Made by a program: the position numbers and the translations under genes. Under the pieces are notes generated by a model. That model was not told the DNA's origin. It made no database searches and was given only the letters and a program-made list of their open reading frames with translations. From Botryllus schlosseri (taxonomy: Eukaryota), in contig CM119380.1 in the NCBI GenBank assembly GCA_051294905.1, positions 14,756,001-14,820,000 of the forward strand: a DNA stretch of 64,000 nt, read 5' to 3'. Positions 26,451 to 59,402 of this stretch are shown here, in pieces; position 1 is the stretch's first letter; each line of letters opens with the position of its first letter.

Positions 26451-29400
26451 GCTATTGATAACTTTACGGATTTTTTTTACGGATAGATGTGCAACAAGTG
26501 ACCCACGATTGAATACGCCGAGATGCGTACTGCCTAGCCGGCAAAGAGCAGCATAATTGGTAGTCCTATAGTTCGCGACCCAAGCGTCCGAATAATTTGA
26601 TATGTCGGTGTTTATCGAAGCAGGTGTTGCACTGATTCTAAAAATACGAATTGAAATCTGGCCAGGGCAATAAAACTACTCCGAAATAGCCAGCAAAGAT
26701 TGATTGTTCTGAACAACGGGAGCGCGACAACACAATGGCCAATGTCGTCAAGCGAATGATCGGAACAATGGAATTTCCATATTTTGGTGACTATTATGGG
26801 TTCCTTTCATTGCCCTGGTATTTGTGCGGCCCCGACCATACTCTGAAATTCTAAATTTGGCCCTGCCACCGAAAAAGGTTGGGAACCACTGCTTTAAATG
26901 CAACCCTAGATGCAACACTGCGACCACGGATATTTGAATTATATTTTTGTGAAACAGCTTCTTTGAGGTACAGAACTTCAATATACAATTGAATAGTATA
27001 TCCATATTGAAATGAACCCGAATATTTTCGGCTGACACTCGTCAGGGGTAATCGTCAGCAACTAGTAGAGAATTCAAAAGAACAGCGTATATCAACAATC
27101 GTAGCACAAAATATGACGTCACCAGCACGAAATGTCTAATACGAGAGCGTTCAATGTACTATTTGTAGATGATACAAGAACTCTTTTTGTTGACACACCC
27201 TTGGCTTATGTATTTTGATAAAAGTCGACTCCAAGGCACACAAATGAAAGTGTGAGCGAGCCATAGCCTACTCGGAAAAGGTCGTTCACTAGAAAGTGGC
27301 AAGCAGTCAATTATTTATGGAAGTGACTATAGTCCGCTAGTTGCGCTTTTCGTCGATATTCGGTGTTCGGTGTCGGGAACCGTTTTTGCCGGAAGAGACA
27401 TATTTCCCTATTTTTTTTCATTTAAAATCCCAAAGAGTCATACATGTAAATCAACTGTTACGTCATAATGGAATATTCGTGACGTCATGCTAGCACTAAT
27501 TCGAACTCACTACATTGGATTCAACGTGTGCGCCACATTTTCTCATTAAAAACTAGTATTTATTCTTCGAAAATGAAGCTCGAATCGTGAGTAAGGCACA
27601 GACTGCCAAGCCTCACCATTGATAACCCAATTCATCTTAAATAGCATATAATTTATTATAACTGGTGTTAATGGAATGTAACTGTCACACTGATTCCGAA
27701 AATCTAAACACTGATCGACTTCTCAATTCTCAAAGTTTTCGGCGGTAACATAACGTTGCGCCACACGCATACATTTTATCGCCGGTACTACAGAGCTACT
27801 TACCAATCAATAACGTGGGTATAGCTATGATGTTGTTTGTAATTCGAGTTCATAATTGTGTTTCATTCAGTTCATTTGGCGCCGTAGATCAGGCAGACAA
27901 TGTGTATTTTAAAACTGCGTTGTGATATGGGCGGCGCTCTCTGATTAATCAACGTGTCAGACAATCCTAGATTTCGATTCGGGTACATAGAATTCGCGAG
28001 TGATATTGGTCGCCGGCATGACAACAACTTAAATATGAAGATTTTGAAAAGATGGGGTCCGAGCCCCTCAACCCGAAGACGGCATTGTCTTAGCCGCTCA
28101 TACACATGTTTATACTGACACGAGAATAATTATTCTGGCCGTGATGAAAATTTACTAACAAGTTGCTGCAATATTGATCAATTCAGTACAAAAATAAATA
28201 TTTGGCAAAGAGCCATATGTTATATCCAAAAGAGCCATAGGCTCCCAACCACTGCTCTACGTCTGAGGAGGGGGATTTCCGCTCTCGGTCCTGGCAGCTT
28301 GACAAGCCATTTTGTCGGCCAACTTGTTACCAATGATATGAGTATGTCCCCGTATAGCCAGACAAGGACAACAATGAATCGCTTGGTACCGAGCGGCCGA
28401 ATTCAAAAGTAGCATTCTGCGTTTGCCGTGACTGAAAGTTGGCCATGACGGATAGTACAGACAGTCTGAGATAATCGGATATCTCTGATGGTTTGAGCCA
28501 TTCTGAGAGATACATTTTAGACGTGGAGAATAGCACGTGCTTCTATGCTAAAGATTGACTGTAGGGTCCCACAAGGTTAAAAACAGTTTATCATCAGCGA
28601 CCGAGTAGTAAACGCATAACCGGCTCCTTCTGTTTATTTAGACCCGTCAGTGTATGTTTAAATGGCATCGTTATAGCGTTCGAATATGAAGTCCGGGGGG
28701 GACTATGAGTTCATGCGGCAGAGGTGCGATACCTTTTTAATGATTTTTGTCAGGTCTACATCAACGTTTGGTGATTGCATCCACGATGTTGGAAAATGTG
28801 TTCTAGTTTCCAGGACAAGGCTATTCAGAGACGCGACATTTGTGGACATGTTAAGGGTGTGAATTGTGGGCTCATGAGGTTGTATATCTCATGCCACAAG
28901 CGTACAAGAACGTATAGTATTGGGTGTTCGTGGGTGTGGTAGCGCCCGCGGTTGCAGTGGTAGTTAGCAAACTCAACTGACGTTGCGGGCATGATTCAAA
29001 TATTCAGATCACTCGCGGGCCGCACCAGTCGACTGATTCCAAAATATTACGTAAAACTCCACAGATTCCATAAATTGGAATCTTTATATGCTTCTTTTGC
29101 TTAATTGTATACTGGCTGTAACCCTGCGTATGCATTGTTAGGAATACAAAATATTTAATCAATGTCAGCGACTTGCTCCTGAAGATGACTAGAAATCACA
29201 ACTCCACTGCGGGGTGGTTTGTATGTGGCCTATGAACAAATACTCGCCATTTGCTATCTTGAATGAATATTTATTGGAAGTACTTCTTACTGCAAATTCG
29301 AGAAATGTGCTTGAATACTCAGAATTGCTTCGCGGGCGGGCGGGATGGAATCATTTGGCGGGCATTATGTCTGACACAACTGATGTAAGCCTAGCTATAC

Positions 29401-30156: not shown

Positions 30157-31013
30157 CAGGGGCGGGCAACATCCGGCCTGCGAAGGGATTTTGTCCGGCC
30201 CGCGGACAGTTTTCCGTCTTATATGATAATGTGGCCCGCGGCTACAGTCTGCCGAGATTCCCCGCTACTGGCTTACTACGTCAAATTTTAGTGACTGTAT
30301 GTTATTATATACATGTATGTACACTGCGCAGCGTGCGAGAGTGGAGCTTACGCGTAAGTTCGTCGAAGCGGGAAGACTTGCATTATCGGAATTTACGATG
30401 TACTCAACCCTAATATCGTTTGTGGTAATCATGGTGTTTGTCGACTACAATGGTAATTTACACCGGACCGATATTTATTATTTTTGATTCCGTAGTCGCC
30501 GACAAGTGGCCCGGCTTTTGTAAGACACCGCTTATGCCAGGGGTCGCCAACTCAAAATGGGTCGCGATCCACTTTTCAAATGTCGTAGAAGCCTCGGTCT
30601 GCGTCAATTAAATATCGAGATAAAATAGGCCAGACAGTTGAACAACGACCCTATCTCGTCACCTACTCCGCCCCAATGAATTGATATCTTGGTAAATTTG
30701 GGGTACCGGGATTATCGAACGCCTTGAAATCTTAATTAGTGATTCCACCGTGTGCTGATTGATCAAAGAGAAGCAGACGTGGAGGCGCCTGTATGACAAT
30801 GCTGCTCTCAAATCTATATTGTGTTCGTCATTATCGGCGAGAAATGGCTTTGAAGTGACATTGCTGTCGTTAAAATACATTTATTAAATACGATTTACTC
30901 CTTGTATATGTGGATAAATGAGAGTATAATTTATCGATTGAGCAATCCGGCCCGCCAAGTATACTTAATTTTCCTATATCCGGCCCGCCGACTGGAGAAG
31001 TTGCCCGCCCCTG
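30157..31013 (+). mobile_element. hAT-type MITE
   Basis: TIRs CAGGGGCGGGCAAC...GTTGCCCGCCCCTG with a perfect 8-bp TSD TATTACAT. Confidence 0.93.
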
Positions 31014-31755: not shown

Positions 31756-32853
31756 CTAGTTAAGTATAAACGTAAGCCACAACTGACTGTGGACTCCGGC
31801 TTACGACTCTAGCAGGCTATCATACAACAGCACGCTCCGTGCAATGTCTTACTGAGTTGAAGTATAGATCAACTTCTTTTCAGGGGCCGCATGCCCTAAA
31901 TCTAAATAATAGGCATTTGTCCTCGAGCCGCAGAATTTCCCTGCGCGAGCCGCGCATTGCACATCATGCACATTGCACATCCCTGAACACACCCTCACTT
32001 ACTAGAGGGAGTTTCCCTGTACGTCTGATATCACATTCCATGGTTTTATTTTTGGTCGACACGCTTTCCACATCGCTGGAGATTCACTTTGCGCTGCTGG
32101 AACTATTTCAACAATAACAGTGCGATGTTCACCGTGTAATATAAAATATGTACATTAACATTCCTCTCTGATAAATCAGCGAGGATACGAACAGCCTAAT
32201 TGCCGCATGGCAAGTGGTTGGCAAATTTTAACGTCGGCAGTCTGTGATGGCTTTTGATTAAAAAGCCCAATCACAATCTTCGTTTTGAAATTAGAGCATT
32301 TGACGAATAGATACGGACAAAAAAACGCTCATCCTACAGAACTCCAGAATATATACCAGCATAATGCATTCATAGTATTTATTCTCCCCTCACACTTCTC
32401 AAGGGTTACTCCTCCAGCTGGGTAAGTAAATACTAACTAACATGAAAGATAATGAGGCATTTGCAGAATTCGAAATATGGATTGCCCAGGTGAAATGAGT
32501 ATAGTGTTGCCTTATTACTAAATCGTGCATCAGAACACGCCCATGCTTAATGCTTTAAGCAAAAGAATTTTAAGACCACGAAGTCTTTTATTTATATAAC
32601 CAAACAAAACACTCCAAGCATGCGTAAGATTGTCTAGCTGTTTTCAGAATACGATATAGCATGATGATAGTGGGTATACCTGCATTGCAATGAATTGAAC
32701 TGCCATTCCATATATACATAATAGAAAACTTATGCCAAATTTTAGTCATTTTGAAGAGCAGGTGCATTGGATATCACGAATTATTGTGAGTAAGTAACTT
32801 GAAATAGAATGTCGATATAGACAACAATAACAGTTTGCTTTGTTTTTTCAGAA

Positions 32854-34312
32854 TTAGTCGTCTTCTTCGACACTGCCGATACAGTCCATACATGTGTCGA
32901 CGTTGTCCTCATCATCCTCTCCACATTTAATGCATCTTCGTATGCAGCGGAAGGGACCCCTAATCAACCTCAAAAACTGGAAAGAGTAGTACATGAGTGT
33001 ATAGCCGGAACAAGAGAAATAACTCGTGTCCACTCACGACACGGATGTGGATCGATTGTTCAACAATGTTCTGTGCTTTCCGCTCGGGAAGATATATGTT
33101 GATACTACAGGGATGGCGTGAACGCGAGGTTCATACTCGCGTTCTGTGTGTGAATCTCGTAAATTTGGAGGTTCGCGTTTGCGAACGAACCTTTGTAGGT
33201 TCTGCACTGTGAACTTTTCTCGTATATTATAATTTTACACGTAATTATTCGATTTCTACTTCGGCGCTATGAAAAAGCACTTAGCACTTAACGAGCATGC
33301 ACCTTGCCAATTCCAAAAAAAATCATTTGCTTTCTTGGTAAAGTTTGCTCGAAATATTCTGCTTTCCGTTTGTGAATATGTAGTGACACTCTGCTGTGAG
33401 CTTGACCAGCAATCGCACAACATCAAGAGTGAAATACACTAGTCACCGAACTGTGCTTATTCAACAAATCAATTATTGAAATCAACGCAATTGATATAAA
33501 GAATGAATCGTTGTCTAATCTAGAAATGTACCAGACCTACGGGATCTGTGTTGATATGATTTGATACGTTTATTATATCATAAAAAATCCGTCTGATTGG
33601 GGTATTGGCAACTATATAACTTGTTCATGAAATATCTGTAGCAAGTATAGAAACAGGTTTTAACTCTGATCAGTATAAATGTAACAATAGTCTGGCGCCT
33701 TAAAAACATATTATGGTCTACCTTAGACCGTAAGGTAGAAGCTTATATTCCCTTGCAAATCGTCTTCGAGATTGTTATCAAAGTCTTGGAAGACGATGAT
33801 TCTATGGAATCGTTGTAGCATATGATTGTTCCAGTTATACATTTGGCTATGTTTAAAAAGTCAGCATGCACTTCAGCATTGTGGCATAATGTGGCGTGAG
33901 TCGTCGCTATAGGTATCGTGGACGTAAATAAATTACTTATAATTCTCACGAACCAGAACCTTTCCGGGGCGCGCACCATCCTTTTAGTTTGCACTTCTGA
34001 GCACACGACGCGGTATAGTTGGGGTTATACTTTTATTCTATCCATATGTTCGAGTCTCAGACATATCTGTGATACGAGCGTCATGTCCGGTCTTCCCGGC
34101 AGAATCGAAGCATGCGATATCTGAGTGCATACTAAGGCATGGCATAAGATCCACATTGAATATTATTAGTGTAAATCATTGACGTCATATTGTCTGGACG
34201 TCAAGACTTCATTTCAAGACTTCATTTGAAAACCATTCGAAGTTATTAGTATATCCTAAACGTAGATGTAAATGCTGCAATTCCTTACCTTTAGGAAATC
34301 CCCGCAAGACAT
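32854..34312 (-). CDS. Cys/acidic micropeptide gene 1 (48 aa, two coding exons)
   Basis: Exon 34312-34289 encodes MSCGDFLK, donor gtaagg. Acceptor tttccag. Exon 32976-32854 encodes FLRLIRGPFRCIRRCIKCGEDDEDNVDTCMDCIGSVEEDD*. Phase-0 intron at the same position in two paralogs. Confidence 0.8.
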
Positions 34313-34550
34313 CTTTTTCTTACAATGTGCCGGAACCGAACAATCAAATCCTCAAATAAAGTAATTGATCTGTTTGTAATGAAACTCCAGTGAGACGTAA
34401 TGATTGAAAATTATGTAGGTGTTGATGTTGTATTCATGGTGTGGCGACATGCTCATTCCATACCAGGCCGGTAATCTGTATATGATTACTGAGCTGTCGA
34501 CTCCACCGCAGCACTGGTTCACTATAGGTTGTTGTAGGAGGAGCCTAGAT

Positions 34551-35391
34551 CAGTGGTTCTCAACCGGGGGTCCGCGGACATTTTCAAGGGATCCGCGAAG
34601 CCTTTAAATTTGCAAAGGACTGATTACGAATTTGTAACTTTTTTAAATTAGGGAAATCACGAAGCAGTTTCGCTTCAAAACTGCTAATGCTTCAGTAAGC
34701 ACATCAACAGAATGGCCGTATGAGTATTTTATTTGATAAATGGCCAAGAGCCTACTGATACAAACATATCTTGCTTTTTAAAGATATTTTGTTTGGGTTT
34801 TTTGAAAATTATTTTTCTAGTCTGCCTCACCATAATCGGCCTCAAAAAATCGATTAAAACCTCATCACGGAATCCATTTTCCCCTGCGATATGCATAATT
34901 GCTATTCCAGAATATCTTGAAGATGAGCTGCTATATAGAAACGACTAGTCTGGGCGTGATAACTTCATTGAAAAATCTGTTTCTCAATTTTGGTGCCATA
35001 TGTTGCGATCGTGTTCAAAGAAGTCGTCGGAAACGTCAGGCGTTAATATTACATTCGCCGCCTTTATGGAAATGGATTTTCGGCACTCATTCATATCAAA
35101 TGTAAGGCGTGAATTTTCAAGACATGGCTACATATTTCAAGAAATTCAGCTGCAGAATTCCCTTGTAAATAATAAAAGTCTACCCATAATTCTACATAGT
35201 AGCCGATGGTATAATTTTGAAGAACAGTCATTTTGTTGCTGTTGATCACTAGCCATGAGTTGATGTTTTCACAAGACAGGTGACGGTTACACGATAATTT
35301 AGCTAAATTTGAACTAAAACTTGACGGGGTCCGCGGGAGACTGTCACAGTCATAAAGGGGTCCGCGAAGACAAAAAGGTTGAGAACAACTG
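34551..35391 (+). mobile_element. hAT-type MITE
   Basis: TIRs CAGTGGTTCTCAACC...GGTTGAGAACAACTG with a perfect 8-bp TSD GCCTAGAT. Confidence 0.93.
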
Positions 35392-37010
35392 GCCTAGATG
35401 AACCTCAAACAAGTTGGATTTGATTCTGGAGTCAACTTCGGTCGGACTCCTTCATAGTTCTATGTCGTAAAGTATTTATTCGTTTCGTTTTGTCATTATC
35501 GGTTGTTTGAATATATGATACGAGCCAGATGTTATCATAGCATAAAATATATGACTAGATAGATGCAATGCATAGTTATGTTAGACGGAAATGGAAACAT
35601 GCGGCTGCCTCGATGCCAGGAATCATTTCACCCAGTAACTCTCAATTAAGTGCCAGTCCGCGTCGACTTCGCTGTCGATCCTAAAAAATATTTCCGATTT
35701 TATGACCTAATTTCAAATACTAAAGGCGTGTGAAAATATCCATTGACAAATTAAGGACAATTTGAAATGTGAAGCTCAGTTAAACAGCCAGTTCCGTGAT
35801 AAACAGCATTGATAGTGATGAGTGAAATATAGTTCATGGTCTACATTGGATATTTGCGTTATTCACAGTGCTGCATATGTTGTATCAACTGCTCAAAACA
35901 GTGGTTGTCAACTTTTTTTATTAGCCGGAAGCCCCGAAAACGGAGAAAAAATTCGTAGCTCTTAATACACTGAGAGCAAGATTTAGAAAGTTCATGATTA
36001 AACAGAATGTCATCAACAATACGACATGTCACGGTTCATTTCTATATTATGATGTTTGTTACCGGAAAAAGAGGCTATCACGTTCGGCCGAACCTCAATA
36101 TCGCGAACTGATTGCCCGGGTGTTAACCTTTTTTTATCTAGTCATCAGCTTCGCAAATCTGAATAGGTGTGACCTTGGCGAGTCGGCGTTAATTAAAATT
36201 TCGAAATTCCACCGGAGCACCGGTCCGGTTCTGAAATTTTACCCGTCAGCAAGCTGCAAGGGTAGAGATTCACTGATTAAGATTATATAAAACCGCAGAC
36301 CGATCATGTTGTTGAAAGTCCCATTTTCTGTCGCCGTCTCGAGCACTCCATGGAAACTCGAGAGATTCTCCCTATTTTACACCTCAGAACATTCAACCGT
36401 TATTCTACCTTACGAGCACGTCGAAGAGCCTACGCCTATATGCTCATATTTCAAGTCTTCGTCTTTCAGCTCAACGCTGCATCTATATAGGCAGATGTTT
36501 GAGAGAAATTCTACTTCACAAATATTTGTACCCTTGAACGTTTTTCCTGCACCATCACACGAGTTATTGCTCTTACTGTTTTAAGAGGCTCTATTACATC
36601 ATCGTCTTATCGTATCGCTCTCGGTACCAACACTTGCACATTATTTTATATAACATCATTGAGCTGGAACAACCAATCTATATCCTGAGATATATATTTT
36701 AAATATGATATATTAAATAATAAAGTCATTTCAAATTCCGTCGGAGCCGAGCTGACAGCGGTTGATTGAAAAAGACATAATACTGATACATCGCTGCACG
36801 TTAGATGCTGAGTCGAATAATTTTCGAAGTAACCAATTATTGCATGGACATGTCTTTCTATATACTAGAAACCGGATACCAAAACTCAGTCATCTTGAAG
36901 AGCAGGTGAATTTAATATCAAGAATTATTTTAAAACACATCTTCAAATAGAATGTCCCAATAAGACATTATTACAAATCGTTGATTCTGCATCGATCATC
37001 CAGCATCCCC

Positions 37011-38508
37011 TCAATCATCACAGTCGAAACAGCAGTCATCGTCACCGTCATCATCATCACACGTAAGGCATTTCCAGATGCAGCGACAGGGACAACAAAT
37101 GCATTTCAGAAACTACAAAGAGAGCATTGCAATACATGACTGTGTACTGTGTAGTCATAACAGATAAATAATTCGTATTCATAGCTATATGATAATTTGC
37201 GAAGTAGGCACTAAAATGCTAAGATATGGCAGGAATTATTCACGCGTTCACTCCTATATGTTGATAGGTTCTGTACTGTGAACTTAAGTCATTAATTATA
37301 ATTTTTCTCTCCATTATAACAATTGTGATTGAAATTTCGACTACTCTCTACATTGTGCAGGAACTATGAAAAGAAATTCATTGCTAAACGATCGTGCACC
37401 ATGCCAATTTCGAAAGCTTCATTCGGTGTGTTATAAAAGTTTGCTCGAAATATTAAGCTGTCCGTTGTGAATATTTAGTGACTACCTGCTGTAAGCTTGG
37501 CCCGCAATCACACAACATAAAAACGAAATACGCTTTGTAGGTATAGTCAGTGAATTGTGGTTATTTACCCTATCAATAATTATGACATATAAGAAATTGC
37601 TAGAAAGAATGCATCGTTGTCTAATGTAAAAAAAATACAGCAGGCGTACGAGATCTATCTTGGTTTGACATGTTTATTGTATCTTACAACCAAATCTGTC
37701 GGATTGGGGTGTTGGCTACTCTATAGCTTGTTTATAAGCTAATATCTTGAGCAAGTATTTCACTCTTATCGATATCAATGTCGCGGTAATCTGACGCCTT
37801 GAGAATACATTGTCCGGTCAAACTTAGACCATTAAGATGTAAGAAATATTCCCTTGCAAGTCCTCTTCGAAATTGTTGGCAAAGCGACGGAAGATATGAT
37901 TTTATGGAATTAATATTTTGTGAATTAATATTTTGTGATACGATTGTTGATATACAATGTTCTTTCCAATTCTCTACTAGTTGCTGACGATTACCCCTGA
38001 CGAGTGTCAGCCAAATATATTCGGGTTCATTTCAATATAATGCTGTGTCCTTTTTCGATGGCTACTTCCATCACCTCGGTGATGGTGCTCTTAGTCTGAA
38101 CGCAGACAGAGCTAGACCTATATATATATACTATTCAATTGGAATTAATAATGCATTTGATTCTGGCAGTTGATACATTTCTGATCCTTCAAAAATAAAC
38201 ATGTACTTCAAAATTGTGACATTATGGGGCATGAGTCATCGCTAGGTGTCGTTTACAATGTATGCAATATATTACTTTACGGAAATTGAAGGGTTGGAAT
38301 TAGCATATGACGTCACGTGACACCATAGGTCCTTGTACGGTGTACGCCTTCGCGTTCACATCGAACCTTTCAAAAATGTTCCCGTTCACACGAGCCAGAA
38401 TCTTTCAGGGGCTCGCACCATCCCTAGTTACAATATAACTATCCTATCAACATAGCCTATGTATAAATTGTCGCAACTATTCACCTTTATAAAACCTTTG
38501 CAACACAT
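37011..38508 (-). CDS. Cys/acidic micropeptide gene 2 (41 aa, two coding exons)
   Basis: Exon 38508-38485 encodes MCCKGFIK, donor gtgaat. Acceptor tttgtag. Exon 37112-37011 encodes FLKCICCPCRCIWKCLTCDDDDGDDDCCFDCDD*. Confidence 0.85.
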
Positions 38509-39007
38509 TTTTCTTCTTTCGATGTAGCGAAACAAAACGATCAAATCTTTAGGTATTGGAATTGATATGCTGGAAAAAACCTCTCGTTAGAGTTTACGAT
38601 TTTAAAGCATTTTGGAATTCACGGTGTGTCACATGCATAGTCATTTTGCAACACACAGATAATAATCTGTTGATTCCTGAGCTGCCGACTTCAACACGGC
38701 GCACGTTCGTCCTAGAATCTAGATTCTAAGGATCCCGCTTTCGTGGAACATATAGCCATAAGGTGTTTATATAGATAAACCTCCAACTGATCTGGTTGGT
38801 ATTAAGTTGTGATCAAGCCAAAATAGCGGCATTCAGCTCTTTCGAGCTAGTAACCTCGGTTGCGGTCGATCCGACGAAGTGGTACTTGAGCTCATTAAAA
38901 TGCTGGGAATGGTACGTGCATAGAAAAGTTTGAGAAGCGGTAGTTTAAAAGTACGCCAAAATTGTCTGAGACTATAGTTACATGTGAAAACCTAGAAGAC
39001 CTTAAAA

Positions 39008-40320
39008 CAGGGGTTCTCAACCTGGGGGGGGGGGGTGGCGAGAAATTTTTGTCAATTTTGTCAATGTCTGTATAAATTGTGACTAAACATGTTTTTCACA
39101 ACCATTCTGAAGAGACGATTATTGTAGATTAAACTTAGATCGTATTCTAGAAAGCTTGCCAAACTCAAACTCCAGCAGTCGCGCTCAACGGAGTATAGGC
39201 TGACTTCAACTTCATTTGAGCAAATTTTTGATATTCTTTGAAGATTGAGAGAAATTCCTACGTGCAAGTCATTCATTACTTTATAGCTTTGGCAGTAGCC
39301 TAAATCTCTGTGCGCTAGGTAGCTGTTGTTGATAGCTGGCGAACTGCACTGCCTAAGACAGACTTAGATGCAATATAGGTTGCCCGGTTTCCCCCTCAAT
39401 TTGGCTATAAATCAACACAATATAATTCATTTCCAAAACTAATAAAATTTAGCATGGCAGGACAGAACGTCGCCGTGCTCTCTGTAGTCACTACCAGCAT
39501 CAGGATTAGTCTCAGTACAACCTACCTTGAAATTAATTGATGTCCTTTTCAATGTTTTTTTTGTTATTTTCAAACAATTTTGGGGAAGTTTGTCAGCAAT
39601 GCAAAAGACTAAACAACTGGAATGCGGATTCAAAATTGCCGTACGATATACCTCATTTATAATATTAGATCAGGGGTGGGCAGCCCGTACGGAAGCATGC
39701 GGCCGTAGAAGAGAGTTTGTGGGGCCGTCGACGCCTAATTCAATTAGTATGTGTTGGCAACCGTAGACATGCAAATTGAAATTACGAATTCACTCCCGAA
39801 TTTTCGAAAGATTTTATTTAATCTTGAAATTTTCTTCGCGCTCCGCGCAATTCAACAAGACTTCATTTTTCGATTTTAATGCAGTAGCGCCCTTCTTACT
39901 TGGAGCAGGAATGGGAATCCTCAAGAAATAACAATTCATTTGCGCCTCTGAAAAATTTTCGCGCTCTGCGCGACAATACGCACTCACAGCAACTATTCAT
40001 AACATTGTCACTCGCGATTTCGGTGCGTGCAATAGGCCGTTGTGAAAAGTATAATAGTCCGGAGTTCACCGGGAATGGATATGGACAGTTTACCATAGGT
40101 ATTTTGCGTCCAGATCGATCATTGCGGCTATGCCCTGGAATGCGGCCTTAGGCTACATAAGTAATCGAATTGCGACCATGATTAGCAAGAAGGTTGGTCA
40201 CCTCTGTATTAGATGAGGTGCTCTTTTTGACATGAAAATAAATGTAAGGCGGGTCAGGGGCGCGCGATTGTTTTGACCATCGCCAAGGGGGACGCGTGTC
40301 AAAAAGGTTGAGAACAGCTG
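39008..40320 (+). mobile_element. hAT-type non-autonomous element carrying a nested MITE
   Basis: TIRs CAGGGGTTCTCAACC...GGTTGAGAACAGCTG with a perfect TSD CCTTAAAA. Internally homologous to about 53320-54716. Confidence 0.92.
39671..40206 (+). mobile_element. Nested hAT-type MITE
   Basis: Ends CAGGGGTGGGCAGCC...GGTTGGTCACCTCTG with a perfect TSD TATTAGAT. Confidence 0.9.
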
Positions 40321-43300
40321 CCTTAAAACAAAACTAAACGAAATTTAAAATTATAACGGAGTCTAACAAACAGCAAATGATATGAATTTGCGCTATCCTA
40401 ACGTTAGTGAGAATGATTCGCTGACTGGAATTTCCTGCGATACGACTTTGAGGTGCAAGCGGCCTTGAAAATTATCTGTCAAAGTTTCGGATATCGCTTT
40501 AACCAGTTCAGTATCAAGGTCATGAAATTATGATGATTTTTATTGTATATCCCATTGGCGCTGAACTCAGGTATGCTAGGTATGCGGCGCATACCTATGC
40601 ATATCCCGAATTCCCTTAGAATGTAACTGCCTGACGAGTTTGTGAATTGTGCGATTTAGAAATAAGCAACGTATTACGTAATGTTGCCGCTTACGTGAGC
40701 AGAGAAAATTCACACCAATACATTGATCGAACGCGATAAATTAACAGACGCGAAGCGGCACGAAGATGTCAATTTCTACACGGGCGACATGCAGCCATTG
40801 GCATGTCATGTAATGAAAAATGATATCTAATGCGGCGGCCGGAACTATCGCGTCTGCTGTGTTTGTGATGTCATAGAGGCTCACGACATTGAAAGTGGAC
40901 GGAATTGATTAAAACACATACTGGATGTGAACAGACCCAAGCGGCGTATCTGATTTTGATTTGAGCTTATACTAAAACACAACGATCAGAAGATATGTTG
41001 CAGGCTCTTGATACCGACAGTTTTGGTTCCTCTGAAATGAGTGTCACTACTGAACAGAGCCCAGAATAGACTTCGCATTTGTGAAAATAATGCATGTAAC
41101 TTTATCTAATTAGTCGTCGCCAAAGACGCGTAACGGTATTCGTTTGTTCTCGAGACGGACTGATTGAAATCTCCTGTTTATCGGCACGTGTATTAGCGAA
41201 TATGACGCGTTTTCTCGGGAGATTGCCAGCTCGCTAATTGACTACAGTCGCATGTGCCAGTGATGTTACGGTAGCGTGAGATGTTGAGTATATCGAGTTT
41301 GTCAACACGAGGAATCTGAAGCGATGTAATTTATCGGCATTGGTGCATGCAATAACCAAATCAAATTCAGCCAGCGGCCCACTGGCTACGCGCCTGCCTG
41401 AGGGTATCATAGTTTTATCCCCATGTACAAGCGACGGGTAGTTGGTGATATTGAAACTTGCGAGTCGGCTCATTTGTCAATTCCGACGTATATTGACGTC
41501 GCCACATTGTGACGTCATCGATCCCGCATACCTACAGAAAATTAGGGTTCAGAGCCTTAAATAGTATTTCCATACCTAGCTTTTCAGTGGTATATTTTGA
41601 CATAATTAGTAATTACACATTATTTGTGTTGATTTAAAATTTTGAAGGTCCAACGGTCTGCAAAACTTGTTCTGAAATTTTAGCGGTCCGAAAGCTAAAT
41701 AAATTGAAAACGACAGAATTTGATTACTTAATACAGCAGATGGTTATTTCTAATTTTCTGAAATATCTTGTGTCGCCGTCTCGACTACTCCATCAAAACT
41801 CAAGATGTTCACCTCGCCAATTATTACTCTTCTGATCGACTAAGATTAAGCCTTCGATCGTACTCCAGAGGCACGTCGACTACCGCGACTAGCCAGTAGC
41901 CAACAAGTCACCTCGCTTCAGCCGAACGATGCATTTATATTGGCCGCAGCTTGAATGAAAAAATGCTTCGTAAATGTGGGTTCCCTGGAACGCAAGCTGC
42001 TTTTTCTGACTTGGTAGTTTCGATTACATCGCCCTTTATTGTTTCACTTTCGATACTACCATTTGCTCGTTGCTTTATCTATCATCATTGAACTGAAACA
42101 ACGCGTCTATTTCTTCACATATGATAATGACAAGTGGAAAAATAAGCCACCGTTAGTTGTGTTGGAGGTTGATCTGGGCTGCTCATCGCCGATCCCGCTG
42201 TAAACGCAGCGTCTTCAAAGGCCAAGAGGAATAGTGAGCCGAACTCTCGAAAGTCGGCAGCAGAGACCCGAAAATGGACGGAAGAAAAGAGAGCACAGGA
42301 AGGTGCGAGTGCGCGAGAATGACAAGTTGTCCATGTCAAGTCCATAGTCCATGAAAGCAAAGACACTGAACTTTATCAAATACATTGTCCTGAAAAGGAA
42401 ATAAGCGCCACTGTGGTCATTGTGTAAAAATGAAATTGATAATACTAATAATTATATTAATAGTCACCGTTTGTACTCCAGTAGAAGTAGAGTCGTAAAT
42501 TCCTACCAGAGTGCAACTAGAAGTAGCGATTTCCGAGTAAGTAAAATAATTAGGCTTAATATTCTAGGCCTAATTTGGCCTAAAAGGTTAAAAACTGTTA
42601 TGTACAAGAAGTAGTCTAAAATCGTGTCCACACGAGTAAGTAGTGCAAGGAGTAAAAATTTACTTGAATTTTCCGAAAGTACTTCGGTACTGACCACCAC
42701 TGCTATGACCTATATCATATTCCTCAAACACCCTTATCTGAATGTGATTATGAACTAAGTAACACACCCATACAAAGTTCCACCCATCATTTCAAGGTCA
42801 CTCACTTCAGATATCTTGGGATGAGTCGTTCAGGATGGCACTGGTTTGGTTTTTATGATACGATAAACATATGAAGTCAAGATTGACTCCGTACGCCTAA
42901 TACATTTTTTACATCAGATAATGATATCAATTTCATTGATTGATTAAATAAGCATCATTTGCTGACTAGATGTAGTGTTCTTAATGTTGTGTGATCGTGG
43001 GTCCATCCCTCAGAAGAGAGTCACTAAATATTCACAAACGGAAAACTGGATGTTTCTAGCAAACATTTGTAACAAAACAATAAAAAAGTTTGAGATTGTC
43101 AAGGTATATGCTCGTTTGGTTTTGATTTTTTATGCTGTCGGCGCCACGCATAGAGTGGCCCGTAGTTGAAATGCTATAAATTTCATGCAAAGATGTTATA
43201 ATGAAGTGAAAATTTTAATATGTGAAAAAGGTTCACAGTGCAAAACTACCAGGGGTCCTTTGTGAATGTGAACCTCTAAATTTCTGAGGTTCACACACAG

Positions 43301-44760
43301 AACGCGAACGTCAACCTCTTGTTCACACCATCCCCATAGTAAATGTGAACCCGAAACCCATATAGTTCGGTCATTTGTTGTACGTTTAACATACCTGAGC
43401 GTCTACTTTTGCTTTCGACTGATCCGCATAGCTGCATTGCGCTTCGCTGACTTTGGTAAGTCTCAAAGCGCATGGGGTGTACTTGCAAAGGCCCTCCTCC
43501 GAAATTGAAAGTGAAAGATATATTGGTTGGGGAAATTCTGAAATACAAAAGCGCTATTTTTCCTTTAAACTCCCGCTGCCAAGCGAAAGACTGACTCTCG
43601 AGCAGTTCTCAACCTTTTTTGACACACCCCCTTACGATAGTGAAATTTATCGCCATATCACAAAATGCAACCCGAATGCTGGCAATCCCAGCGGATAGTT
43701 GGATGGCATGGAAGGTTATGAGTTATGACTAGGGCGATTTTTTTGACATGTCAAAAAAAGTCAAAATTAGCTCAAAATTGTTGCGTTAGGTCAAATAATG
43801 CCAAAATTGTTTACGAAGTTAAAACTTTTTTGCAACCTGCATTTCGTTTGTATAGTAGATTTTGCACTTTCGGTGACTTATCATTTGGCATTTTGCAGCT
43901 TGTAGCCTATTTTATAGGCCTATACCGTTGTAGAAGGCCCCTTGTCTGCTCATTGGGAATCATATTAAACATTCAAATGAAACAAATGGTGTTATGCTAA
44001 ACGTACCGCAATATCCCAACTGAAGCAAGACTGCGTGGGCATTGCATGGTTCTTATTGTTATATTGTTATATAGACAACGTTGTCAGAATGAGGCAACAC
44101 GGTTGTTCACCAGCAGTGTAAGCACAACTTCAGTGTTGTCAGCCAACAACTGCTGCTGTTGAACGTCGCTTTTTATGATATATGCATTTCGGTTTCATTT
44201 CTCGGGCATGCCTGTTTTTACTTTATGCTTTCCGTCAATTTGGGTGGTTGATTGATGTTGACTCTTCCAAGTCGCTTCAACCTCTTACTATTGTTTCGTT
44301 GTATCGCTATTCTCCTGGTATTTCGGGTGAACCTGCTTATAAACAGAGCAAAACATTCTCGCTCCCACCTAGCTCTCTTGACAATACGCCCACAACATAA
44401 TATAATCGATCATAATTTTAACTACGGCTGGGTCACGGACAACACTGATCACCGTACTAAGTTAGTATATTGCGGCCGGTCAAGAATATGAGTTTTCTGT
44501 GGCTGACCAAGAACGTTTCATAGCACTCCTCATGCAAAAAATCCGTAGCCAGTGAGTGGCCACGGGAATGCTGAAATTCCGTATCCATACTCTATACATC
44601 TATCCTGTCTTTCTATCCACTAGAAACCCAATGCCAAACTTCAGTCATCTTGTAGAGCAGGCGAATTTAATATCATGAATCATTTCAAAACACTTCTTCA
44701 AATAGAGCGCCCAAATACGATAACAAAACAAAACTTTAGTTATGCTTTGATCTTCCAGCA

Positions 44761-45098
44761 TCACCCGCATACGCCGATCCCGATGCAAGCGCTATCATCA
44801 TCCTCACAACTGCAAAGGCGTTTGCAGAAGCAGCGGCAGGGACAACAAATGCATTTCAGAAACTACAAATAAATTATTATCTTAAATAAAAGTGCAGCCA
44901 TAACAAGAAAAATAATTTACGTTCATAGCTATATGAGAATTCGTGAAACGGGCCCGTATCGAAAATACTCCACCGGTGGGAATTATTCACACGTTCACTC
45001 CTATATAGACTGCTATCAATTAGGATACAGGCACTATTCTATAAACTTAGTTATAATTAGACGCAATTCTTCACCTTTATGAAACATTCGCAACACAT
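44761..45098 (-). CDS. Cys/acidic micropeptide gene 3 (41 aa, two coding exons)
   Basis: Exon 45098-45075 encodes MCCECFIK, donor gtgaag. Acceptor tttgtag. Exon 44862-44761 encodes FLKCICCPCRCFCKRLCSCEDDDSACIGIGVCG*. Intron is 212 nt. Confidence 0.85.
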
Positions 45099-45360
45099 TT
45101 TTCTTCTTTAGACGTATCGCAACCGAACGACCAAATCTTTAAGTAAAGTAATTGATCTGTTGAAAAAATAAAATTTCGTCAGATCTGATGATTTTAAAGT
45201 ATATTGGATTTCATATAGTGTGTCGACATGCATAATCATGCAGCCGTTACATCATAATTTGTTGATTCCTGAGCTGCCGAGAAAGACAATGCTTACGCGG
45301 ATCAGATGTCCGTGAGGATTTTAAATAGACCAACCTCAAACATTTTCGAATGGATTTCGA

Positions 45361-45425: not shown

Positions 45426-46722
45426 ATCGCCACTTTATTGTGAAGTATGAAGTATGCAATATGCATAATAAGTATGTCAATCATGTCGTAAAGTATGTTA
45501 TGTTTTATCTTCATCGATTATTTCAATATATGATTCAACTCAGAGTTTACCAAAGCATAAAATGATAAGATAGATACAAAACGTTGGTATTTTATGCAAA
45601 TAGGTAAGATTATATGACCATACGACTAGCTCGATACAAGGAGTCATTGAGATCTGCGCCGATCGTTCTGCCTGTCCTCCAAATATTTCCAATTTTATAT
45701 CTTAATTGCAATATGCAATGTGCGGAAGCTCGATGTTCGTAGATTAAATAGATCAAATTTCAAATGTAAAACGTCGTTAGGACTCTGCCAGTTCCGAAAT
45801 TTACGGCGATAATTGCGCGCTTGCAAATAATGATAGCCCTGTAGTTGGGATTATATCGTACGTCACAACACCGCATGCGTTTTGCCAACAGTTTAAATGA
45901 ACGCCAAAATCGTTTAAGACATGTAGAAGATGAGAATAATTTGAAAAAATTGAACTAAATTTGACATCATAATGGAGTCTAACAAACAGCAAAGTTTTAT
46001 GCAATAATTCTTTTGCGGATGACTATGAATTCGCGCAATCTTAACACTACTGAGAATGACTAGCTGACTCTAAAATTTCCTATAATGCCACTTTGAGATC
46101 CAAACAGACTAGACATTTTCCGTCAAACTTTTGGATACAGTTTTAACAATAATCTAATCAGTTCATTGTCAAGGTCATGAAATTCTGCTGATTTTTTGTA
46201 CGATTTGTTTATATGATTTTAAAGTTTGAGGATCCCCCGGCCCACATAATTGGTGTTGGAATTTTAGCGGTCCGCAAACTAACGGTTAAGAACTCCCGAT
46301 TTAGATTACATAACACGGCAGAGAGATGTTCCTAATTTTCTGAAAAATATTGTGTCGCCGTCTCCAGAACTCGATCGCGGCTTAAGATGGTCGTTAGCCC
46401 CATTAGTTATTATACTTCAGATTACATGCAGCCTTCGATCGTCCTCCAGAAGCACGTCGACTACCGCGACTATATCCTGCGCCGCTTACAAGTCACCTCG
46501 CTGGAGCTGAATCATGCATTTATATAGGCTGCAGTAGGAATGAAAAAGTGCTACGCAAGTGCTAGTTACCTTGAACGCAAGTTGCTTTTCAGGGCTTGGT
46601 AACTATATAGTTTCGAATACTAGCAGCTTCAACCTTTCTATTGTTTCGCTGTTGGAGCTATACGATTTGCACTTTGCTTTATCTAACACCATTGAGCTGA
46701 AAAAACGCGTCTACGTATTGAC

Positions 46723-47143: not shown

Positions 47144-48512
47144 GTCTTGACATATAACAATAATAAGAGGTGGCATACGTTGTTACAATTCGTACTCACG
47201 TAAAAGTAGAACTAGATGTAGCCATTTCTAAGTAGGTTAAATAAGTGAATATTTGAAGCCTAGTTCCGCTTAAAACGTTGAAAACTTGTACGTACATGTA
47301 GAAGTAGTTTAAAATGATAACCACCCGAGTAATTGATGTAAGTACGCAATACCTACTTAAGTTCTCTGAAAAGTTTAGGTAATTCGGTCCTGACAAACAC
47401 TGCTAGAACCAACATCATATCCTTCAGACAGTCTTATTTGGATGTGACGACGAACTAAGTAACAGACACATTCATAGTTACACCGATCATTTCACGGACA
47501 CTCAGTAGATGGCTTGGGATGACTCGTTCGGGATGGAGAGTGTCAAAGCGGTGAATGCCAAAACAACAAGCGAAGCACTAGAAAGCCATTCACGGTATCG
47601 AGTGTCAAAATAAATAGGCATTCAAATTAGCGAGCCGTAATCAACTATTTATGTGCAGAAATCACACAAACAGAAAATTACATACATGCACCGTCAACAT
47701 TTCTCATCTCAGCATTATTAGACGATTCAGACCTCTATAATACTGATTCGGATTGACTATGTAAGAGACGAAAAATTATGATCAAGAATTCCGCTGCAAA
47801 CTTATATAGCGAAAGACCGCTAACGGTAATATTATTCGCTACGAAATGCCACACGGCAGTAACCATTTGTCAGTGTGTCGTGGTCGGTGATAAAACAGCA
47901 ATAACGCGTCGCTGTATAACGGACAAAGTCCTATCTTATTAAGTCAGTAGCAAGCAGGAGGTGTTATGATATGGCATTCTATCGGACGCTCTCTTATTTC
48001 GAAATCAAGTGACGGCCAATAATGTTTCCAACCCGGGTAAACGCAAACCCGAAACCCATTTACCTGTTACTTTTTGCACGATGCCATATCTGGGCGTGTA
48101 CTTTTGCTTTCGGTTAATCCAAATCGCTTCATTGTGATTCGCTGACTTTGGTTAGGTTTCAAGGCGTATCAGTTGTACCTGCGATGGTCCTTCAAAAGTG
48201 AAAGTGAAATATAGAAACCGCTAGGGGAACTTCCGAAATACAAATGCGATGTGCTATTTTGCGTTCAAACTCTTGCCAAGCGAAAGGCTGGCTCTAGTAA
48301 ATATATATTCATGCCCCTGACCTTACCTCAGCCGTAGTGTAGGCTACCCAATATTTATCACGTCACGCTTGAACTAGGTAGCAAACTTTTTCTTGACGAT
48401 CTGTCTGTAACACCGATTTAACGCAAACGACGATATTGGTCAGTTTCTTTGATATCGAGATGGGTGACAAGATGTTTTGTCGTTATCTTTTGCTTTTATC
48501 CTCCACTTACGG

Positions 48513-49684
48513 CAGGGGCGGGCAACTTCTCCAGTCGGCGGGCCGGATATAGGAAAATTAAATGCCGAATCGATTCATTATTCGCCCATTTGTCCACACA
48601 CGGAATAAATCATATTTAATGAATGTATTCTAACGACAGCAATGTAACTTCAAAGCCATTTCTCGCCGATAATGACGAATACAATGTAGATTTGAGAACA
48701 GCATTGTCACACAGGCGCCGCCATGTCTGCTTCTCACTGATCAATTAACACACGGTGCAATCATGGTGTCCTATACTGACTGGCTTGCCGATCGCAAAAT
48801 TTGATAAAACGGGTATCAATCGAAAGCTGCCATGGTACTGATTGCGAAAATATAAAGAATTCTGCTCGTGGCCCTGTAACCCCCCCAAAATCAGCCTCGA
48901 ATGTTGCATCGTAACGGAGTTTGGAATTGTGACGCAACCATGCCGTCAGGAGCAAGTGAGAGCAGCGCAAACCGCACGCAAGCGTATTGGCCATTGTTAC
49001 GTACCCGATTGAGCAATCACACTCTCACTCTCGTGTGCAGTTGCTCCTGAGCTGCTCAGACGGTATGGTTGCGTTGCGTTATAATACCAAACTCCGTTAC
49101 AATGCAACATTCCAGGCTGATTTTGGGGGGTTCCGGGGCCACAAACGGAATACAAATTTATATTTTCGCAGTCAGTACCTTGGCATCTTTCGATTGATAC
49201 CGGATCTATCGAATTTAATGCTCGGCAAGCCGGTCAAAAATTACCTTCAAATTGACTGTAGCCAAATGGAAAGTGTGACGTAGACCAATTTCACTGAGCC
49301 GCGAGATTTGCTTTATGTCCACACCATATAGGACACTATGATGCAATCCTTAATTAAGATTTCAAGGTGTTCGATAAGCCTGGTACCCCAAATTTACCAA
49401 GATATCAATTCATTAGGGTTGAGTAGACTACATGGTAAATGCCGATAATGCAAGTTTTCTCGCTTCGATGAACTTACGCATATAAGCTCTACTCTCGCAC
49501 GCTGCGCACACACGTATAGAATAACATAGAGTCACTAAAATTTGACTTTTAAGCAAGCAGTGGGGAATCTCGTCAGACTGGGGCCGTGGGCCATTATAAT
49601 GTAAGGCGGGAAACTGTCCGCGGGCCGGACAAAATCCCGTCGCGGGCCGGATCCGGCCCGCGGGCCGTATGTTGCCCACCCCTG
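48513..49684 (-). mobile_element. hAT-type MITE, same family as 30157-31013 in inverted orientation, with nested insert
   Basis: TIRs CAGGGGCGGGCAAC...GTTGCCCACCCCTG. TSD ACTTACGG/ACTTACGA. The internal sequence is the reverse complement of the 30 kb copy. Confidence 0.9.
48762..49338. mobile_element. Nested TIR element (CAT(A/G)GTGTCCTATA ends)
   Basis: Inverted ends catggtgtcctata / tataggacactatg, flanked by (g/a)tgcaat. Absent at the orthologous position of the 30 kb MITE. Related pieces at about 50553-50820 and 52550-52790. Confidence 0.75.
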
Positions 49685-52542: not shown

Positions 52543-52868
52543 TTCTAAGCTTCACTCTCGTGTTACTAGACAAGATTGTTTCGTCACAATGCCAAACTCG
52601 ATCACAATGGAATATTAGAAGCTAATTTTGGGGGTTCCATGACCATGAACAAAATAATATTTATATATTCGTAATCAGTACAGCAGCAGCTTTCCATTGA
52701 CACCCGTTTTATCAAATTTAACGCTCGGCAAGCCAGTCAAAAATGGCCATAAATTTCCCTTTGCTCAAATAGAAAGTAGGACTATAGATTACTAACCTAC
52801 GGATAGATACGCAACTCCTGGTGGTTACGCTTGGGCTAGCAGTGTTCCGTATTGCTCAGCATCTAAAA

Positions 52869-55364: not shown

Positions 55365-55498
55365 TGTAGATAGTAATTGTATTAACAGAATCAGTACAGG
55401 CAAACTTAGTCCGACCCACCACCGCCGCCGCTCTCACGTTCTCCCCACACCAGTGCCTCTCGCAGGTCCTGGTGCACATACAACGCATGCAAACCACA
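55365..55498 (-). repeat. 3' LTR
   Basis: Identical to 59403-59536. Confidence 0.97.
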
Positions 55499-55575
55499 TA
55501 CCCCCCTGATCTCAAGATCAAAAGCAAACGAAATGAAACAAATCACTAAACAATGCAACAAACTATAATATAATG

Positions 55576-58500: not shown

Positions 58501-58683
58501 TTGCTTACACACGTCTTCTCGCACCACTGATCTCTGGCAACCACTATCAACGAGAGCTTCTACAGATATTCCAAATATTTTTACAGAAATGATTGGCAGC
58601 ACCTTTTTCCTCACTGTCGGTGGCTGGGGAACCCATCCGATGCTGACCGTTCCCCATTGCCGTTTCCCTGATTGATTGGCCAT
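55576..58683 (-). CDS. pol: Pol polyprotein (protease, RT, RNase H, integrase), expressed by -1 frameshift
   Basis: Motifs [44 protein letters not shown] Zn finger, LALD / ILSDNG / VERNHR. Uninterrupted. Confidence 0.96.
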
Positions 58684-59387: not shown

Positions 59388-59402
59388 ATTGCCGCGATAG
59401 CT

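What the first reader, a model, noticed from the sequence alone, without database searches (positions are those of the whole stretch)
32854..45098. Hidden tandem family of three Cys-rich/Asp-rich micropeptide genes
Seen: three paralogous minus-strand genes, each with a 24-nt first coding exon, a phase-0 GT-AG intron and a terminal exon. Products: MSCGDFLKFLRLIRGPFRCIRRCIKCGEDDEDNVDTCMDCIGSVEEDD (6 Cys), MCCKGFIKFLKCICCPCRCIWKCLTCDDDDGDDDCCFDCDD (12 Cys, 10 Asp) and MCCECFIKFLKCICCPCRCFCKRLCSCEDDDSACIGIGVCG (13 Cys). Frame, splice sites and the basic/hydrophobic-then-acidic polarity are conserved while intron lengths (1312, 1372, 212 nt) vary, which argues for real genes. There is no signal peptide. 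Inference: palmitoylated membrane-tethered peptides with a metal- or Ca-binding acidic tail, or a new metallothionein-like class. They are too short for standard annotation.
Basis: partly seen in the sequence, partly recalled or inferred. Interest (0 to 1): 0.8.

Follow-up and report, generated by a model that had tools for sequence, protein, structure and literature searches.

The report
Three tandem orphan Cys-rich micropeptide genes
Three neighbouring two-exon mini-genes for 41-48-residue peptides, each a cysteine-studded basic front half followed by an acidic tail, are really in the sequence and look kept by selection, but no expression data or relatives could be found, so their function remains inferred.

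Summary
Three minus-strand paralogues (ATG at 34312, 38508 and 45098) each have a 24-nt first coding exon, a phase-0 GT-AG intron (1312, 1372, 212 nt) and a terminal exon.

They are the only copies in the window. Each sits in one unit of a diverged tandem duplication (about 4-7 kb) that also carries a conserved upstream block.

Evidence for real genes:
- ATG, donor, acceptor and open frame survive in all three copies. The one alignable stretch of intron is only about 72-79% identical. A neutral simulation gives about 0.2-1.5% per comparison.
- 31 of 35 TGY triplets lie in the reading frame.
- The first 26 codons have no indels.
- No upstream ATG lies in the conserved 62-nt leader.

The peptides themselves evolve fast (dN/dS about 0.4-1.3). 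The leader and a 3' block are better conserved than the coding sequence.

No homologue or family was found by protein, Pfam, Rfam, metagenome or literature searches. There is no signal peptide or transmembrane span.

Best reading: a lineage-restricted, fast-evolving family of intracellular micropeptides whose basic Cys cluster binds membrane, probably S-acylated. Metal binding is the main rival. Expression is untested.

The parts
34289..34312 (-). g1 first coding exon (MSCGDFLK), ATG at 34312
   Evidence: AAG ATG context, donor AAG|GTAAGG at 34288
32977..34288 (-). g1 intron, 1312 nt, phase 0, GT-AG
   Evidence: One stretch of about 500 alignment columns is 72-79% identical to the g2 intron and the rest aligns poorly (58% overall). 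It also holds a repeat found inverted at 42922-43341.
32854..32976 (-). g1 terminal coding exon (40 codons + TAA)
34313..34374 (-). g1 conserved 62-nt leader (5' UTR), begins right after a CAG
   Evidence: 86% identical to the g3 leader; no upstream ATG
32715..32853 (-). g1 3' UTR-like region with the conserved block (32715-32813)
   Evidence: (D3)
38485..38508 (-). g2 first coding exon (MCCKGFIK), ATG at 38508
   Evidence: AAAATG, donor AAG|GTGAAT
37113..38484 (-). g2 intron, 1372 nt, phase 0, GT-AG
   Evidence: contains a 119-nt repeat also at 27004-27122
37011..37112 (-). g2 terminal coding exon (33 codons + TGA)
36851..37010 (-). g2 3' UTR-like region; ATTAAA 95 nt after the stop
   Evidence: (D1)
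38509..38688 (-). g2 leader and proximal upstream region alignable with g3 (TTTAAAA at -98)
45075..45098 (-). g3 first coding exon (MCCECFIK), ATG at 45098
44863..45074 (-). g3 intron, 212 nt, an internal-deletion derivative of the ancestral intron
44761..44862 (-). g3 terminal coding exon (33 codons + TGA); acidic tail largely lost
44606..44760 (-). g3 3' UTR-like region; ATTAAA 90 nt after the stop
45099..45280 (-). g3 leader and proximal upstream region (TTTAAAA at -100)
36189..36700 (-). X block upstream of g1 (conserved partner of each gene, keeps a TATATA[AG]A motif); role unknown, strand not established
41630..42118 (-). X block upstream of g2
46214..46722 (-). X block upstream of g3

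Best explanation
These are three real, tandemly duplicated, taxonomically restricted protein-coding mini-genes. Each is most simply a compact unit of promoter-proximal region, a leader of about 62-70 nt, an 8-codon exon, a phase-0 intron and a terminal exon with a 3' UTR of about 100-160 nt. Each makes a 41-48-residue peptide that stays inside the cell, having no signal peptide and no transmembrane span.

Shown here:
- the gene anatomy;
- the paralogy;
- retention of gene signals above neutral expectation;
- in-frame accumulation of Cys codons;
- fast peptide evolution with better-kept UTR-like flanks.

Inferred:
- The N-terminal 26 residues (net +4 to +6, hydrophobic residues spaced about 3-4 apart, 4 Cys in g1 and 10-11 in g2/g3, Cys at or next to position 2-3) act as a membrane-binding segment. 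It is probably multiply S-acylated by DHHC enzymes, as in other short Cys clusters next to basic or hydrophobic residues.
- The Asp/Glu tail (net -10/-11 in g1 and g2) projects into the cytosol as a cation-binding or protein-binding module.
- g3 is a diverging, possibly decaying, copy that has lost most of the acidic tail.
For: - Anatomy and translations.
- Only three copies, all strongly related.
- Tandem unit with collinear upstream blocks.
- The only part of the g1/g2 introns that aligns well is one stretch of about 500 columns, at 72-79% identity. The whole intron aligns at 58%, against 41-45% for shuffled sequence, with one gap event per about 50 nt.
- ATG, GT, AG, the open frame and an indel-free first 78 coding nt persist in all three copies.
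- Simulation of neutral drift gives P = 0.002-0.015 for keeping all of these in one comparison.
- TGY triplets in frame: 6 of 8, 12 of 13 and 13 of 14.
- g2 and g3 share 67 of 78 nt (86%) in the first 26 codons, against about 72% over their longer alignable stretches.
- The leader has no upstream ATG. In-frame stops upstream in g1 and g3 fix the ATG as the start.
- A at -3 in all three copies.
- ATTAAA at the same aligned place after the stop in g2 and g3.
- No hydrophobic span or signal-type h-region; the charge dipole is present.
- Analogy for the mechanism: the Cys-rich 'transmembrane' module of yeast CYSTM proteins was shown to be a palmitoylated membrane anchor, not a helix through the bilayer (PMC10840359).
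Against: - No transcript, splice-junction, ribosome or peptide evidence was obtainable.
- No homologue was found in any other genome:
  - the word-index search of 5.8 billion proteins with the g2 peptide and with g1 exon 2 found nothing;
  - the exhaustive profile search of 1.84 billion representatives gave 0 hits at E of 0.001 or better;
  - the metagenome pattern scan found nothing.
  Cross-species conservation is therefore untested. The species itself seems absent from those databases.
- Coding sequence is not better conserved than the flanks. Differences are spread evenly over codon positions. dN/dS is 0.38, 1.27 and 0.65 on only 26 codons.
- The three copies are not independent samples.
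- The neutral indel rate was taken from a TE-bearing intron and may be too high.
- The locus is TE-rich.
- AlphaFold on the exon-2 parts gave only low-confidence models.
Confidence: 0.55

Rival explanations
1. Real genes, but the peptides are thiolate metal binders. They would be a metallothionein-like buffer or detoxifier, or in g1/g2 a minimal Zn knuckle pair built on CxxC-x8-10-CxxC, rather than lipid-anchored peptides.
For: - g2 and g3 are 29% and 32% Cys, with CC, CxC and CxxC spacings.
- g1 and g2 share C23-x2-C26 followed 8-10 residues later by CxxC.
- g1 has a weak sub-threshold match to the double zinc ribbon family (E 0.021, 15 bits against a cut-off of 27).
- Acidic tails could add hard-cation sites.
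Against: - g1 has only 6 Cys (12%).
- All three carry Phe, Ile, Leu and (g2) Trp inside the Cys region, which classical metallothioneins largely avoid (established knowledge).
- No metallothionein family matched in Pfam.
- The CxxC pair is not kept in g3.
- The Cys region is strongly basic and its hydrophobic and basic residues alternate at a spacing of about 3-4, which suits membrane binding more than a metal cluster.
Confidence: 0.15
2. Spliced but non-coding, or coding only by accident. The conserved units would be exons of a tandemly duplicated lncRNA or regulatory transcript, or young proto-genes. Selection would act on the RNA, leader and 3' block, not on a peptide.
For: - The best-conserved parts are outside the ORF. 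The leader is 67-78% identical and the block 81-160 nt after the stop is 72-87%, against 60-70% for most of the ORF in comparisons with g1.
- Substitutions are flat across codon positions and dN/dS is near 1.
- No homologues were found.
- A second frame of exon 2 is also open because of the biased composition.
Against: - ATG retention, absence of stops and absence of frameshifts are not needed for a non-coding RNA, yet all are kept.
- Cys codons accumulated almost only in the ATG frame, on both sides of the intron.
- No conserved RNA structure and no Rfam match.
Confidence: 0.2
3. Not functional at all: a diverged segmental duplication of junk or TE-derived DNA in which an ORF and splice-like dinucleotides survive by chance.
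For: - The surroundings are TE-rich and repeats lie inside the introns.
- A weak HTH (DUF4817-like, E 0.022) trace lies on the plus strand of one X block.
- Expression is unknown.
Against: - Joint retention of all gene signals in three copies, at about 25% divergence in the alignable intron, is improbable under neutrality. It is about 0.002-0.015 per comparison.
- Discrete blocks (leader, N-terminal codons, 3' block) are better conserved than their neighbours.
- The unit is not a multi-copy repeat in the window.
Confidence: 0.1

Closest known systems
CYSTM / CYSPD proteins (Pfam PF12734; yeast Cpp1-3, plant CDT1/PCC1)
   Same: - Small eukaryotic proteins without a signal peptide.
- Their hydrophobic poly-Cys segment anchors them to membranes by palmitoylation (PMC10840359).
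- Some members are linked to metal tolerance.
- This was the best named lead of the feature-based Atlas search, though weak (score 0.65).
   Different: - The Cys module is C-terminal there and N-terminal here.
- CYSTM proteins are 60-150 aa with Pro/Gly/Glu-rich N-termini.
- No Pfam match was found here.
- There is no sequence homology, so this is not a member.
N-terminal dual or multiple-Cys palmitoylation motifs next to basic or hydrophobic residues (GAP-43 type; SNAP-25 and cysteine-string clusters; coronavirus spike tail, where a Cys cluster precedes an acidic stretch)
   Same: Short Cys clusters sit among Lys/Arg and hydrophobic residues, with no transmembrane helix of their own. In the spike tail a Cys-rich stretch is followed by acidic residues. 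(From my own knowledge of these proteins; the spike paper surfaced.)
   Different: Those are motifs inside much larger proteins. Here the motif is essentially the whole gene product. The resemblance is compositional and was not tested.
Metallothioneins
   Same: Very small and about 30% Cys in g2/g3, with CC, CxC and CxxC motifs. They are often tandemly duplicated.
   Different: - g1 is only 12% Cys.
- Aromatic and aliphatic residues and a strong basic charge lie in the Cys region.
- A long poly-Asp/Glu tail is present.
- No family match was found.
Drosophila Mst(3)CGP family (Mst84D cluster, Mst87F)
   Same: Tandemly arranged genes for small Cys-rich proteins, with a conserved element in the 5' leader that controls transcription and translation (PMC3439415). 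That parallels the conserved leader and 3' block here.
   Different: The family is named for a Cys-Gly-Pro motif (search term), which is absent here. An acidic tail is present here. The lineage is different and there is no homology. Testis expression here is pure conjecture.

Membership tests
Metallothionein | Cys content of roughly 20-30% in CxC/CC/CxxC motifs in every member | tested here: not met
   g2 is 29% and g3 is 32%, but g1 is only 12% (6 of 48)
Metallothionein | Near absence of aromatic and bulky hydrophobic residues | tested here: not met
   Phe, Ile and Leu in all three and Trp in g2, inside the Cys region
Metallothionein | Sequence match to a metallothionein family profile | tested here: not met
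   Pfam scan at E up to 10 returned no metallothionein family
Metallothionein | Stoichiometric metal-thiolate binding and metal inducibility | not testable with these tools
   needs biochemistry and expression data
CYSTM/CYSPD (PF12734) | C-terminal Cys-rich hydrophobic module matching the family profile | tested here: not met
   No Pfam hit. The Cys module is N-terminal. Only a weak feature-space lead was found (0.65).
S-acylated peripheral membrane peptides (functional class, not a homology family) | Cys residues flanked by basic or hydrophobic residues, with no signal peptide and no transmembrane helix | tested here: met
   Net +4 to +6 in residues 1-26. The maximum KD(19) is 1.25 or less. 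No uncharged run longer than 10 residues.
S-acylated peripheral membrane peptides (functional class, not a homology family) | Thioester-linked fatty acid demonstrated | not testable with these tools
   needs acyl-biotin exchange or click labelling
Zinc ribbon (DZR, PF12773) | Two CxxC knuckles and a profile score above the gathering cut-off | tested here: not met
   g1 scores 15.4 bits against a cut-off of 27.3. The CxxC...CxxC pair is present in g1 and g2 but not in g3.
Protein-coding gene (general) | Start codon, splice sites and frame kept among paralogues beyond neutral expectation | tested here: met
Protein-coding gene (general) | Purifying selection on the amino-acid sequence | tested here: inconclusive
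   dN/dS 0.38, 1.27 and 0.65 on 26 codons. g2/g3 N-terminal identity is 86% against about 72% over their longer alignable stretches.
Protein-coding gene (general) | Transcription, splicing and translation observed | not testable with these tools
   no transcriptome of this organism is reachable; its own proteins are not in the searched collections

The most novel reading that the evidence does not exclude
A previously unseen class of animal micropeptides, essentially nothing but a poly-Cys, basic membrane anchor joined to a poly-Asp/Glu tail. It would be made without a signal peptide from two-exon genes and would evolve by in-frame gain of Cys codons. It would work as an S-acylated cation (Ca2+ or metal) buffer or recruiter at the cytosolic membrane face, or as a new metallothionein-like class.
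Probability: 0.2. Interest if true: 0.7.

Novelty: new variant of a known kind. Interest (0 to 1): 0.42.

Why it matters
If expressed, these would be unannotated, taxonomically restricted micropeptide genes whose whole product is a Cys cluster plus an acidic tail. That would be a minimal natural model for multi-site S-acylation or thiolate metal binding.

They would also be an example of a small-ORF family diversifying by in-frame gain of Cys codons while its UTR-like flanks stay conserved.

The case further shows that two-exon ORFs of about 40 codons can be picked out from paralogue comparison alone. Until a transcript is seen, it remains a well-formed prediction rather than a discovery.

Tried and rejected
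- **Homology searches, all blank:**
  - word-index protein search with the g2 peptide and with g1 exon 2;
  - exhaustive HMM profile of the three exon-2 peptides against 1.84 billion representatives;
  - Pfam (only sub-threshold DZR and Tenui_NCP noise);
  - back-translated pattern scan of metagenome contigs;
  - literature search for peptide strings;
  - earlier scan notes by place, words and sequence.
- **Atlas feature search**: only generic Cys-rich leads (CYSTM, HEV ORF3, CYSRT1, PLAC8, MDFI), all below a meaningful score.
- After that, spliced peptides were not sent to any remote tool, so only exon-2 parts were searched or folded.
- **AlphaFold** on g1 exon 2 gave pLDDT 64 (two helices). 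On g2 exon 2 with the 3-row alignment it gave pLDDT 48. Both are too poor to use, and no fold search was run.
- **RNA explanations for the conserved 3' block:** no consensus structure with covariation and no Rfam family.
- **Plus-strand 16-nt micro-exon in the 3' block:** considered from the AG...CAG|GTGAAT look, then rejected. It would have to recur three times in tandem, and g3 lacks the GT.
- **Upstream coding exon:** rejected, because g1 and g3 have in-frame stops in the leader.
- **Other ORFs of 83-100 aa in 30-49 kb:** no Pfam family.
- **Organism identification failed.** The window's LRR ORF is not on record. Its nearest relative is a 68%-identical protein on one Logan contig.
Full report
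**What is there**

| Gene | Exon 1 | Donor / acceptor | Intron | Exon 2 (with stop) | Peptide |
|---|---|---|---|---|---|
| g1 | 34312-34289 | AAG\|GTAAGG / TTTCCAG\| | 1312 nt | 32976-32854 | 48 aa, 6 Cys |
| g2 | 38508-38485 | GTGAAT / TTTGTAG\| | 1372 nt | 37112-37011 | 41 aa, 12 Cys, 10 Asp |
| g3 | 45098-45075 | GTGAAG / TTTGTAG\| | 212 nt | 44862-44761 | 41 aa, 13 Cys |

All introns are phase 0. All three ATGs have A at -3. Profiles built from the 5' part and from the 3' part find exactly these three places in the 64-kb window and nothing else.

**Setting**

The window is eukaryotic and rich in mobile elements:
- retroelement ORFs at 17.8-25 kb and 55.4-59.5 kb;
- ISXO2-like transposase ORFs;
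- an intronless LRR ORF.

Self-comparison shows that each gene is the 3' end of one unit of a diverged tandem duplication of about 4-7 kb. Collinear upstream blocks recur in each unit:
- X blocks at 36189-36700, 41630-42118 and 46214-46722;
- for two units, Y blocks at 42515-43598 and 47210-48295.

X keeps a TATATA[AG]A motif in all copies. Its role is open: a distal promoter with a non-coding first exon, an enhancer, or old transposon debris. The last option rests on a weak HTH trace (E 0.022).

The long introns of g1 and g2 share one well-aligned stretch of about 500 columns at 72-79% identity. The rest aligns poorly, giving 58% overall against 41-45% for shuffled sequence. The g3 intron is an internal deletion that kept both ends.

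The whole cluster is bracketed by inverted copies of another repeat, at 30.2-31.0 kb and 48.5-49.7 kb.

**Is it more than chance?**

1. *Retention of gene signals.* The alignable intron stretch sets a rough neutral yardstick of about 25% divergence and one gap event per about 50 nt. Simulating drift at 15-25% divergence with that indel rate, one comparison keeps the ATG, GT and AG, gains no in-frame stop and suffers no frameshift with probability 0.002-0.015. Two such comparisons are available. This is the main argument for constraint. Two caveats apply: the copies share ancestry, and the indel rate may be inflated by TE insertions.
2. *In-frame Cys codons.* TGY triplets lie in the ATG frame in 6 of 8, 12 of 13 and 13 of 14 cases. 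This holds on both sides of the intron. It is what selection for Cys codons predicts and what a non-coding sequence does not.
3. *No indels in the core.* The 78 nt of exon 1 plus the first 18 codons of exon 2 have no gaps in any pair. The flanks have gaps in nearly every 60-100-nt segment. The protein alignment of exon 2 needs only whole-codon gaps.
4. *A clean leader.* The conserved 62-nt leader has no upstream ATG. In-frame stops lie upstream of the ATG in g1 and g3, so the ATG is the start and there is no hidden upstream coding exon.
5. *Transcript-like ends.* g2 and g3 share ATTAAA at the same aligned position 90-95 nt after the stop. A well-conserved GT-rich stretch follows it. A TTTAAAA lies about 100 nt before the ATG of g2 and g3, about 38 nt before the conserved leader; it is degenerate in g1.

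**What argues for caution**

- The peptide is not the best-conserved part.
  - Between g1 and g2/g3 the ORF is 60-75% identical.
  - The leader is 67-78% identical.
  - The block 81-160 nt after the stop is 72-87% identical.
- Differences are spread evenly over codon positions: 7/8/9, 11/8/7 and 6/1/4.
- Nei-Gojobori dN/dS on the first 26 codons is 0.38, 1.27 and 0.65.
- Only g2 against g3 shows the N-terminal codons clearly better kept (86%) than their longer alignable stretches (about 72%).

This picture of conserved untranslated flanks and gene signals with a fast-changing product is familiar from rapidly diversifying small-peptide families. It is also what a young or non-coding transcript could show.

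The 3' block has no conserved RNA fold and no Rfam match.

**Relatives**

None were found:
- the word-index search of 5.8 billion proteins with the g2 peptide and with g1 exon 2 found no candidates;
- the exhaustive profile search of 1.84 billion cluster representatives gave no hit at E of 0.001 or better;
- Pfam gave only sub-threshold noise;
- the feature-space Atlas search gave only generic Cys-rich leads below any useful score;
- the metagenome pattern scan and the literature string search were blank.

These blanks are weak evidence. The organism's own proteins are not in the collections: the LRR ORF is not on record, and its best relative is 68% identical on one Logan contig. Peptides of 41-48 aa are also rarely called as genes. 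Cross-species conservation therefore remains untested, not disproved.

**What the peptides look like**

- Residues 1-26 carry net +6, +5 and +4.
- Phe, Ile and Leu alternate with Lys and Arg at a spacing of about 3-4.
- Cys sits at position 3 in all three copies and also at position 2 in g2 and g3.
- Residues 1-26 hold 4 Cys in g1 and 10-11 in g2/g3.
- A conserved Pro at residue 16 splits the segment.
- The tails carry net -11, -10 and -4.
- No uncharged stretch exceeds 10 residues, and the highest 19-residue Kyte-Doolittle mean is 1.25. There is therefore neither a signal-peptide core nor a transmembrane helix.
- Invariant positions in exon 2 are F, L, I, P, R, three Cys and a DD pair.
- g1 and g2 share CxxC-x8-10-CxxC; g3 does not.
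- The g3 tail (…DDDSACIGIGVCG) still aligns in frame with g1's CIGSV, so g3 is a diverged copy and not a frameshifted one.
- AlphaFold models of the exon-2 parts were of low confidence and were not used.

**Mechanism**

I commit to this reading: real, lineage-restricted micropeptide genes whose basic, hydrophobic Cys cluster binds the cytosolic face of membranes and is probably multiply S-acylated, with the acidic tail exposed.

The nearest experimentally grounded analogy is the CYSTM/CYSPD module. That short hydrophobic poly-Cys segment was long annotated as transmembrane and was then shown in yeast to be a palmitoylated anchor (PMC10840359). It is an analogy only: the module is at the other end of the protein, and no profile match exists, so membership fails.

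The main rival is thiolate metal binding. It fits g2 and g3 by composition but fits g1 poorly, and it fits the aromatic, aliphatic and basic content of the Cys region poorly.

The Drosophila Mst(3)CGP family offers a parallel for tandem genes for small Cys-rich proteins with a conserved regulatory leader (PMC3439415). It shares no motif with these peptides.

**Verdict**

- The functional part is untested inference.
- I put about 0.7 on these being translated genes of some kind. Of that, 0.55 goes to the membrane-anchor reading as the working model and 0.15 to the metal-binding rival.
- A non-coding or proto-gene transcript gets 0.2 and junk gets 0.1.
- The finding is a sound, testable prediction of an orphan micropeptide family. 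It is interesting if expressed, but not yet a surprise to a specialist.

Noticed in passing
window 55365-59536: 134-nt direct repeats, 100% identical (55365-55498 and 59403-59536), bracket minus-strand ORFs with protease, RT, RNase H and integrase domains. This looks like a young LTR retrotransposon.
   Followed up: partly
window 30162-31013 and 48513-49661: Inverted copies (82-89% identical) of one repeat bracket the whole micropeptide cluster. Further copies of the same repeat family lie at about 50552-50815 and 52568-52783.
   Followed up: no
window 36189-36700, 41630-42118, 46214-46722: X blocks 1.1-3.6 kb upstream of each micropeptide gene are about 72% identical. They keep a TATATA[AG]A motif and several invariant 9-17-nt stretches (for example GAGACGGCGACA and TCGACGTGC). 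They could be a distal promoter with a non-coding exon, an enhancer, or old transposon debris.
   Followed up: partly
window 32715-32813, 36859-36956, 44614-44700: The best-conserved part of each unit is not the ORF. It is a block 80-160 nt after the stop, containing CACCTGCTCT(T/A)CAA(A/G)ATGACT (an E-box-like CACCTG in g1 and g2). No RNA fold or Rfam match explains it.
   Followed up: partly
window 27004-27122 and 37920-38038: A 119-nt element, 91.6% identical and inverted, sits inside the g2 intron. It is probably a short mobile element.
   Followed up: no
window 1491-2438 and 24012-24977: Two minus-strand ORFs (315 and 321 aa) carry an ISXO2-like DDE transposase domain (PF12762), a family mostly known from bacteria, in this eukaryotic window.
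   Followed up: no
window 39066-39641 and 53371-54659: A repeat shared at 84-86% identity between the spacer upstream of g2 and a distant site.
   Followed up: no
window 16160-16402: BLAST pairs 16160-16282 with 16280-16402 at 100% identity, a perfect tandem duplication with a 120-nt period.
   Followed up: no
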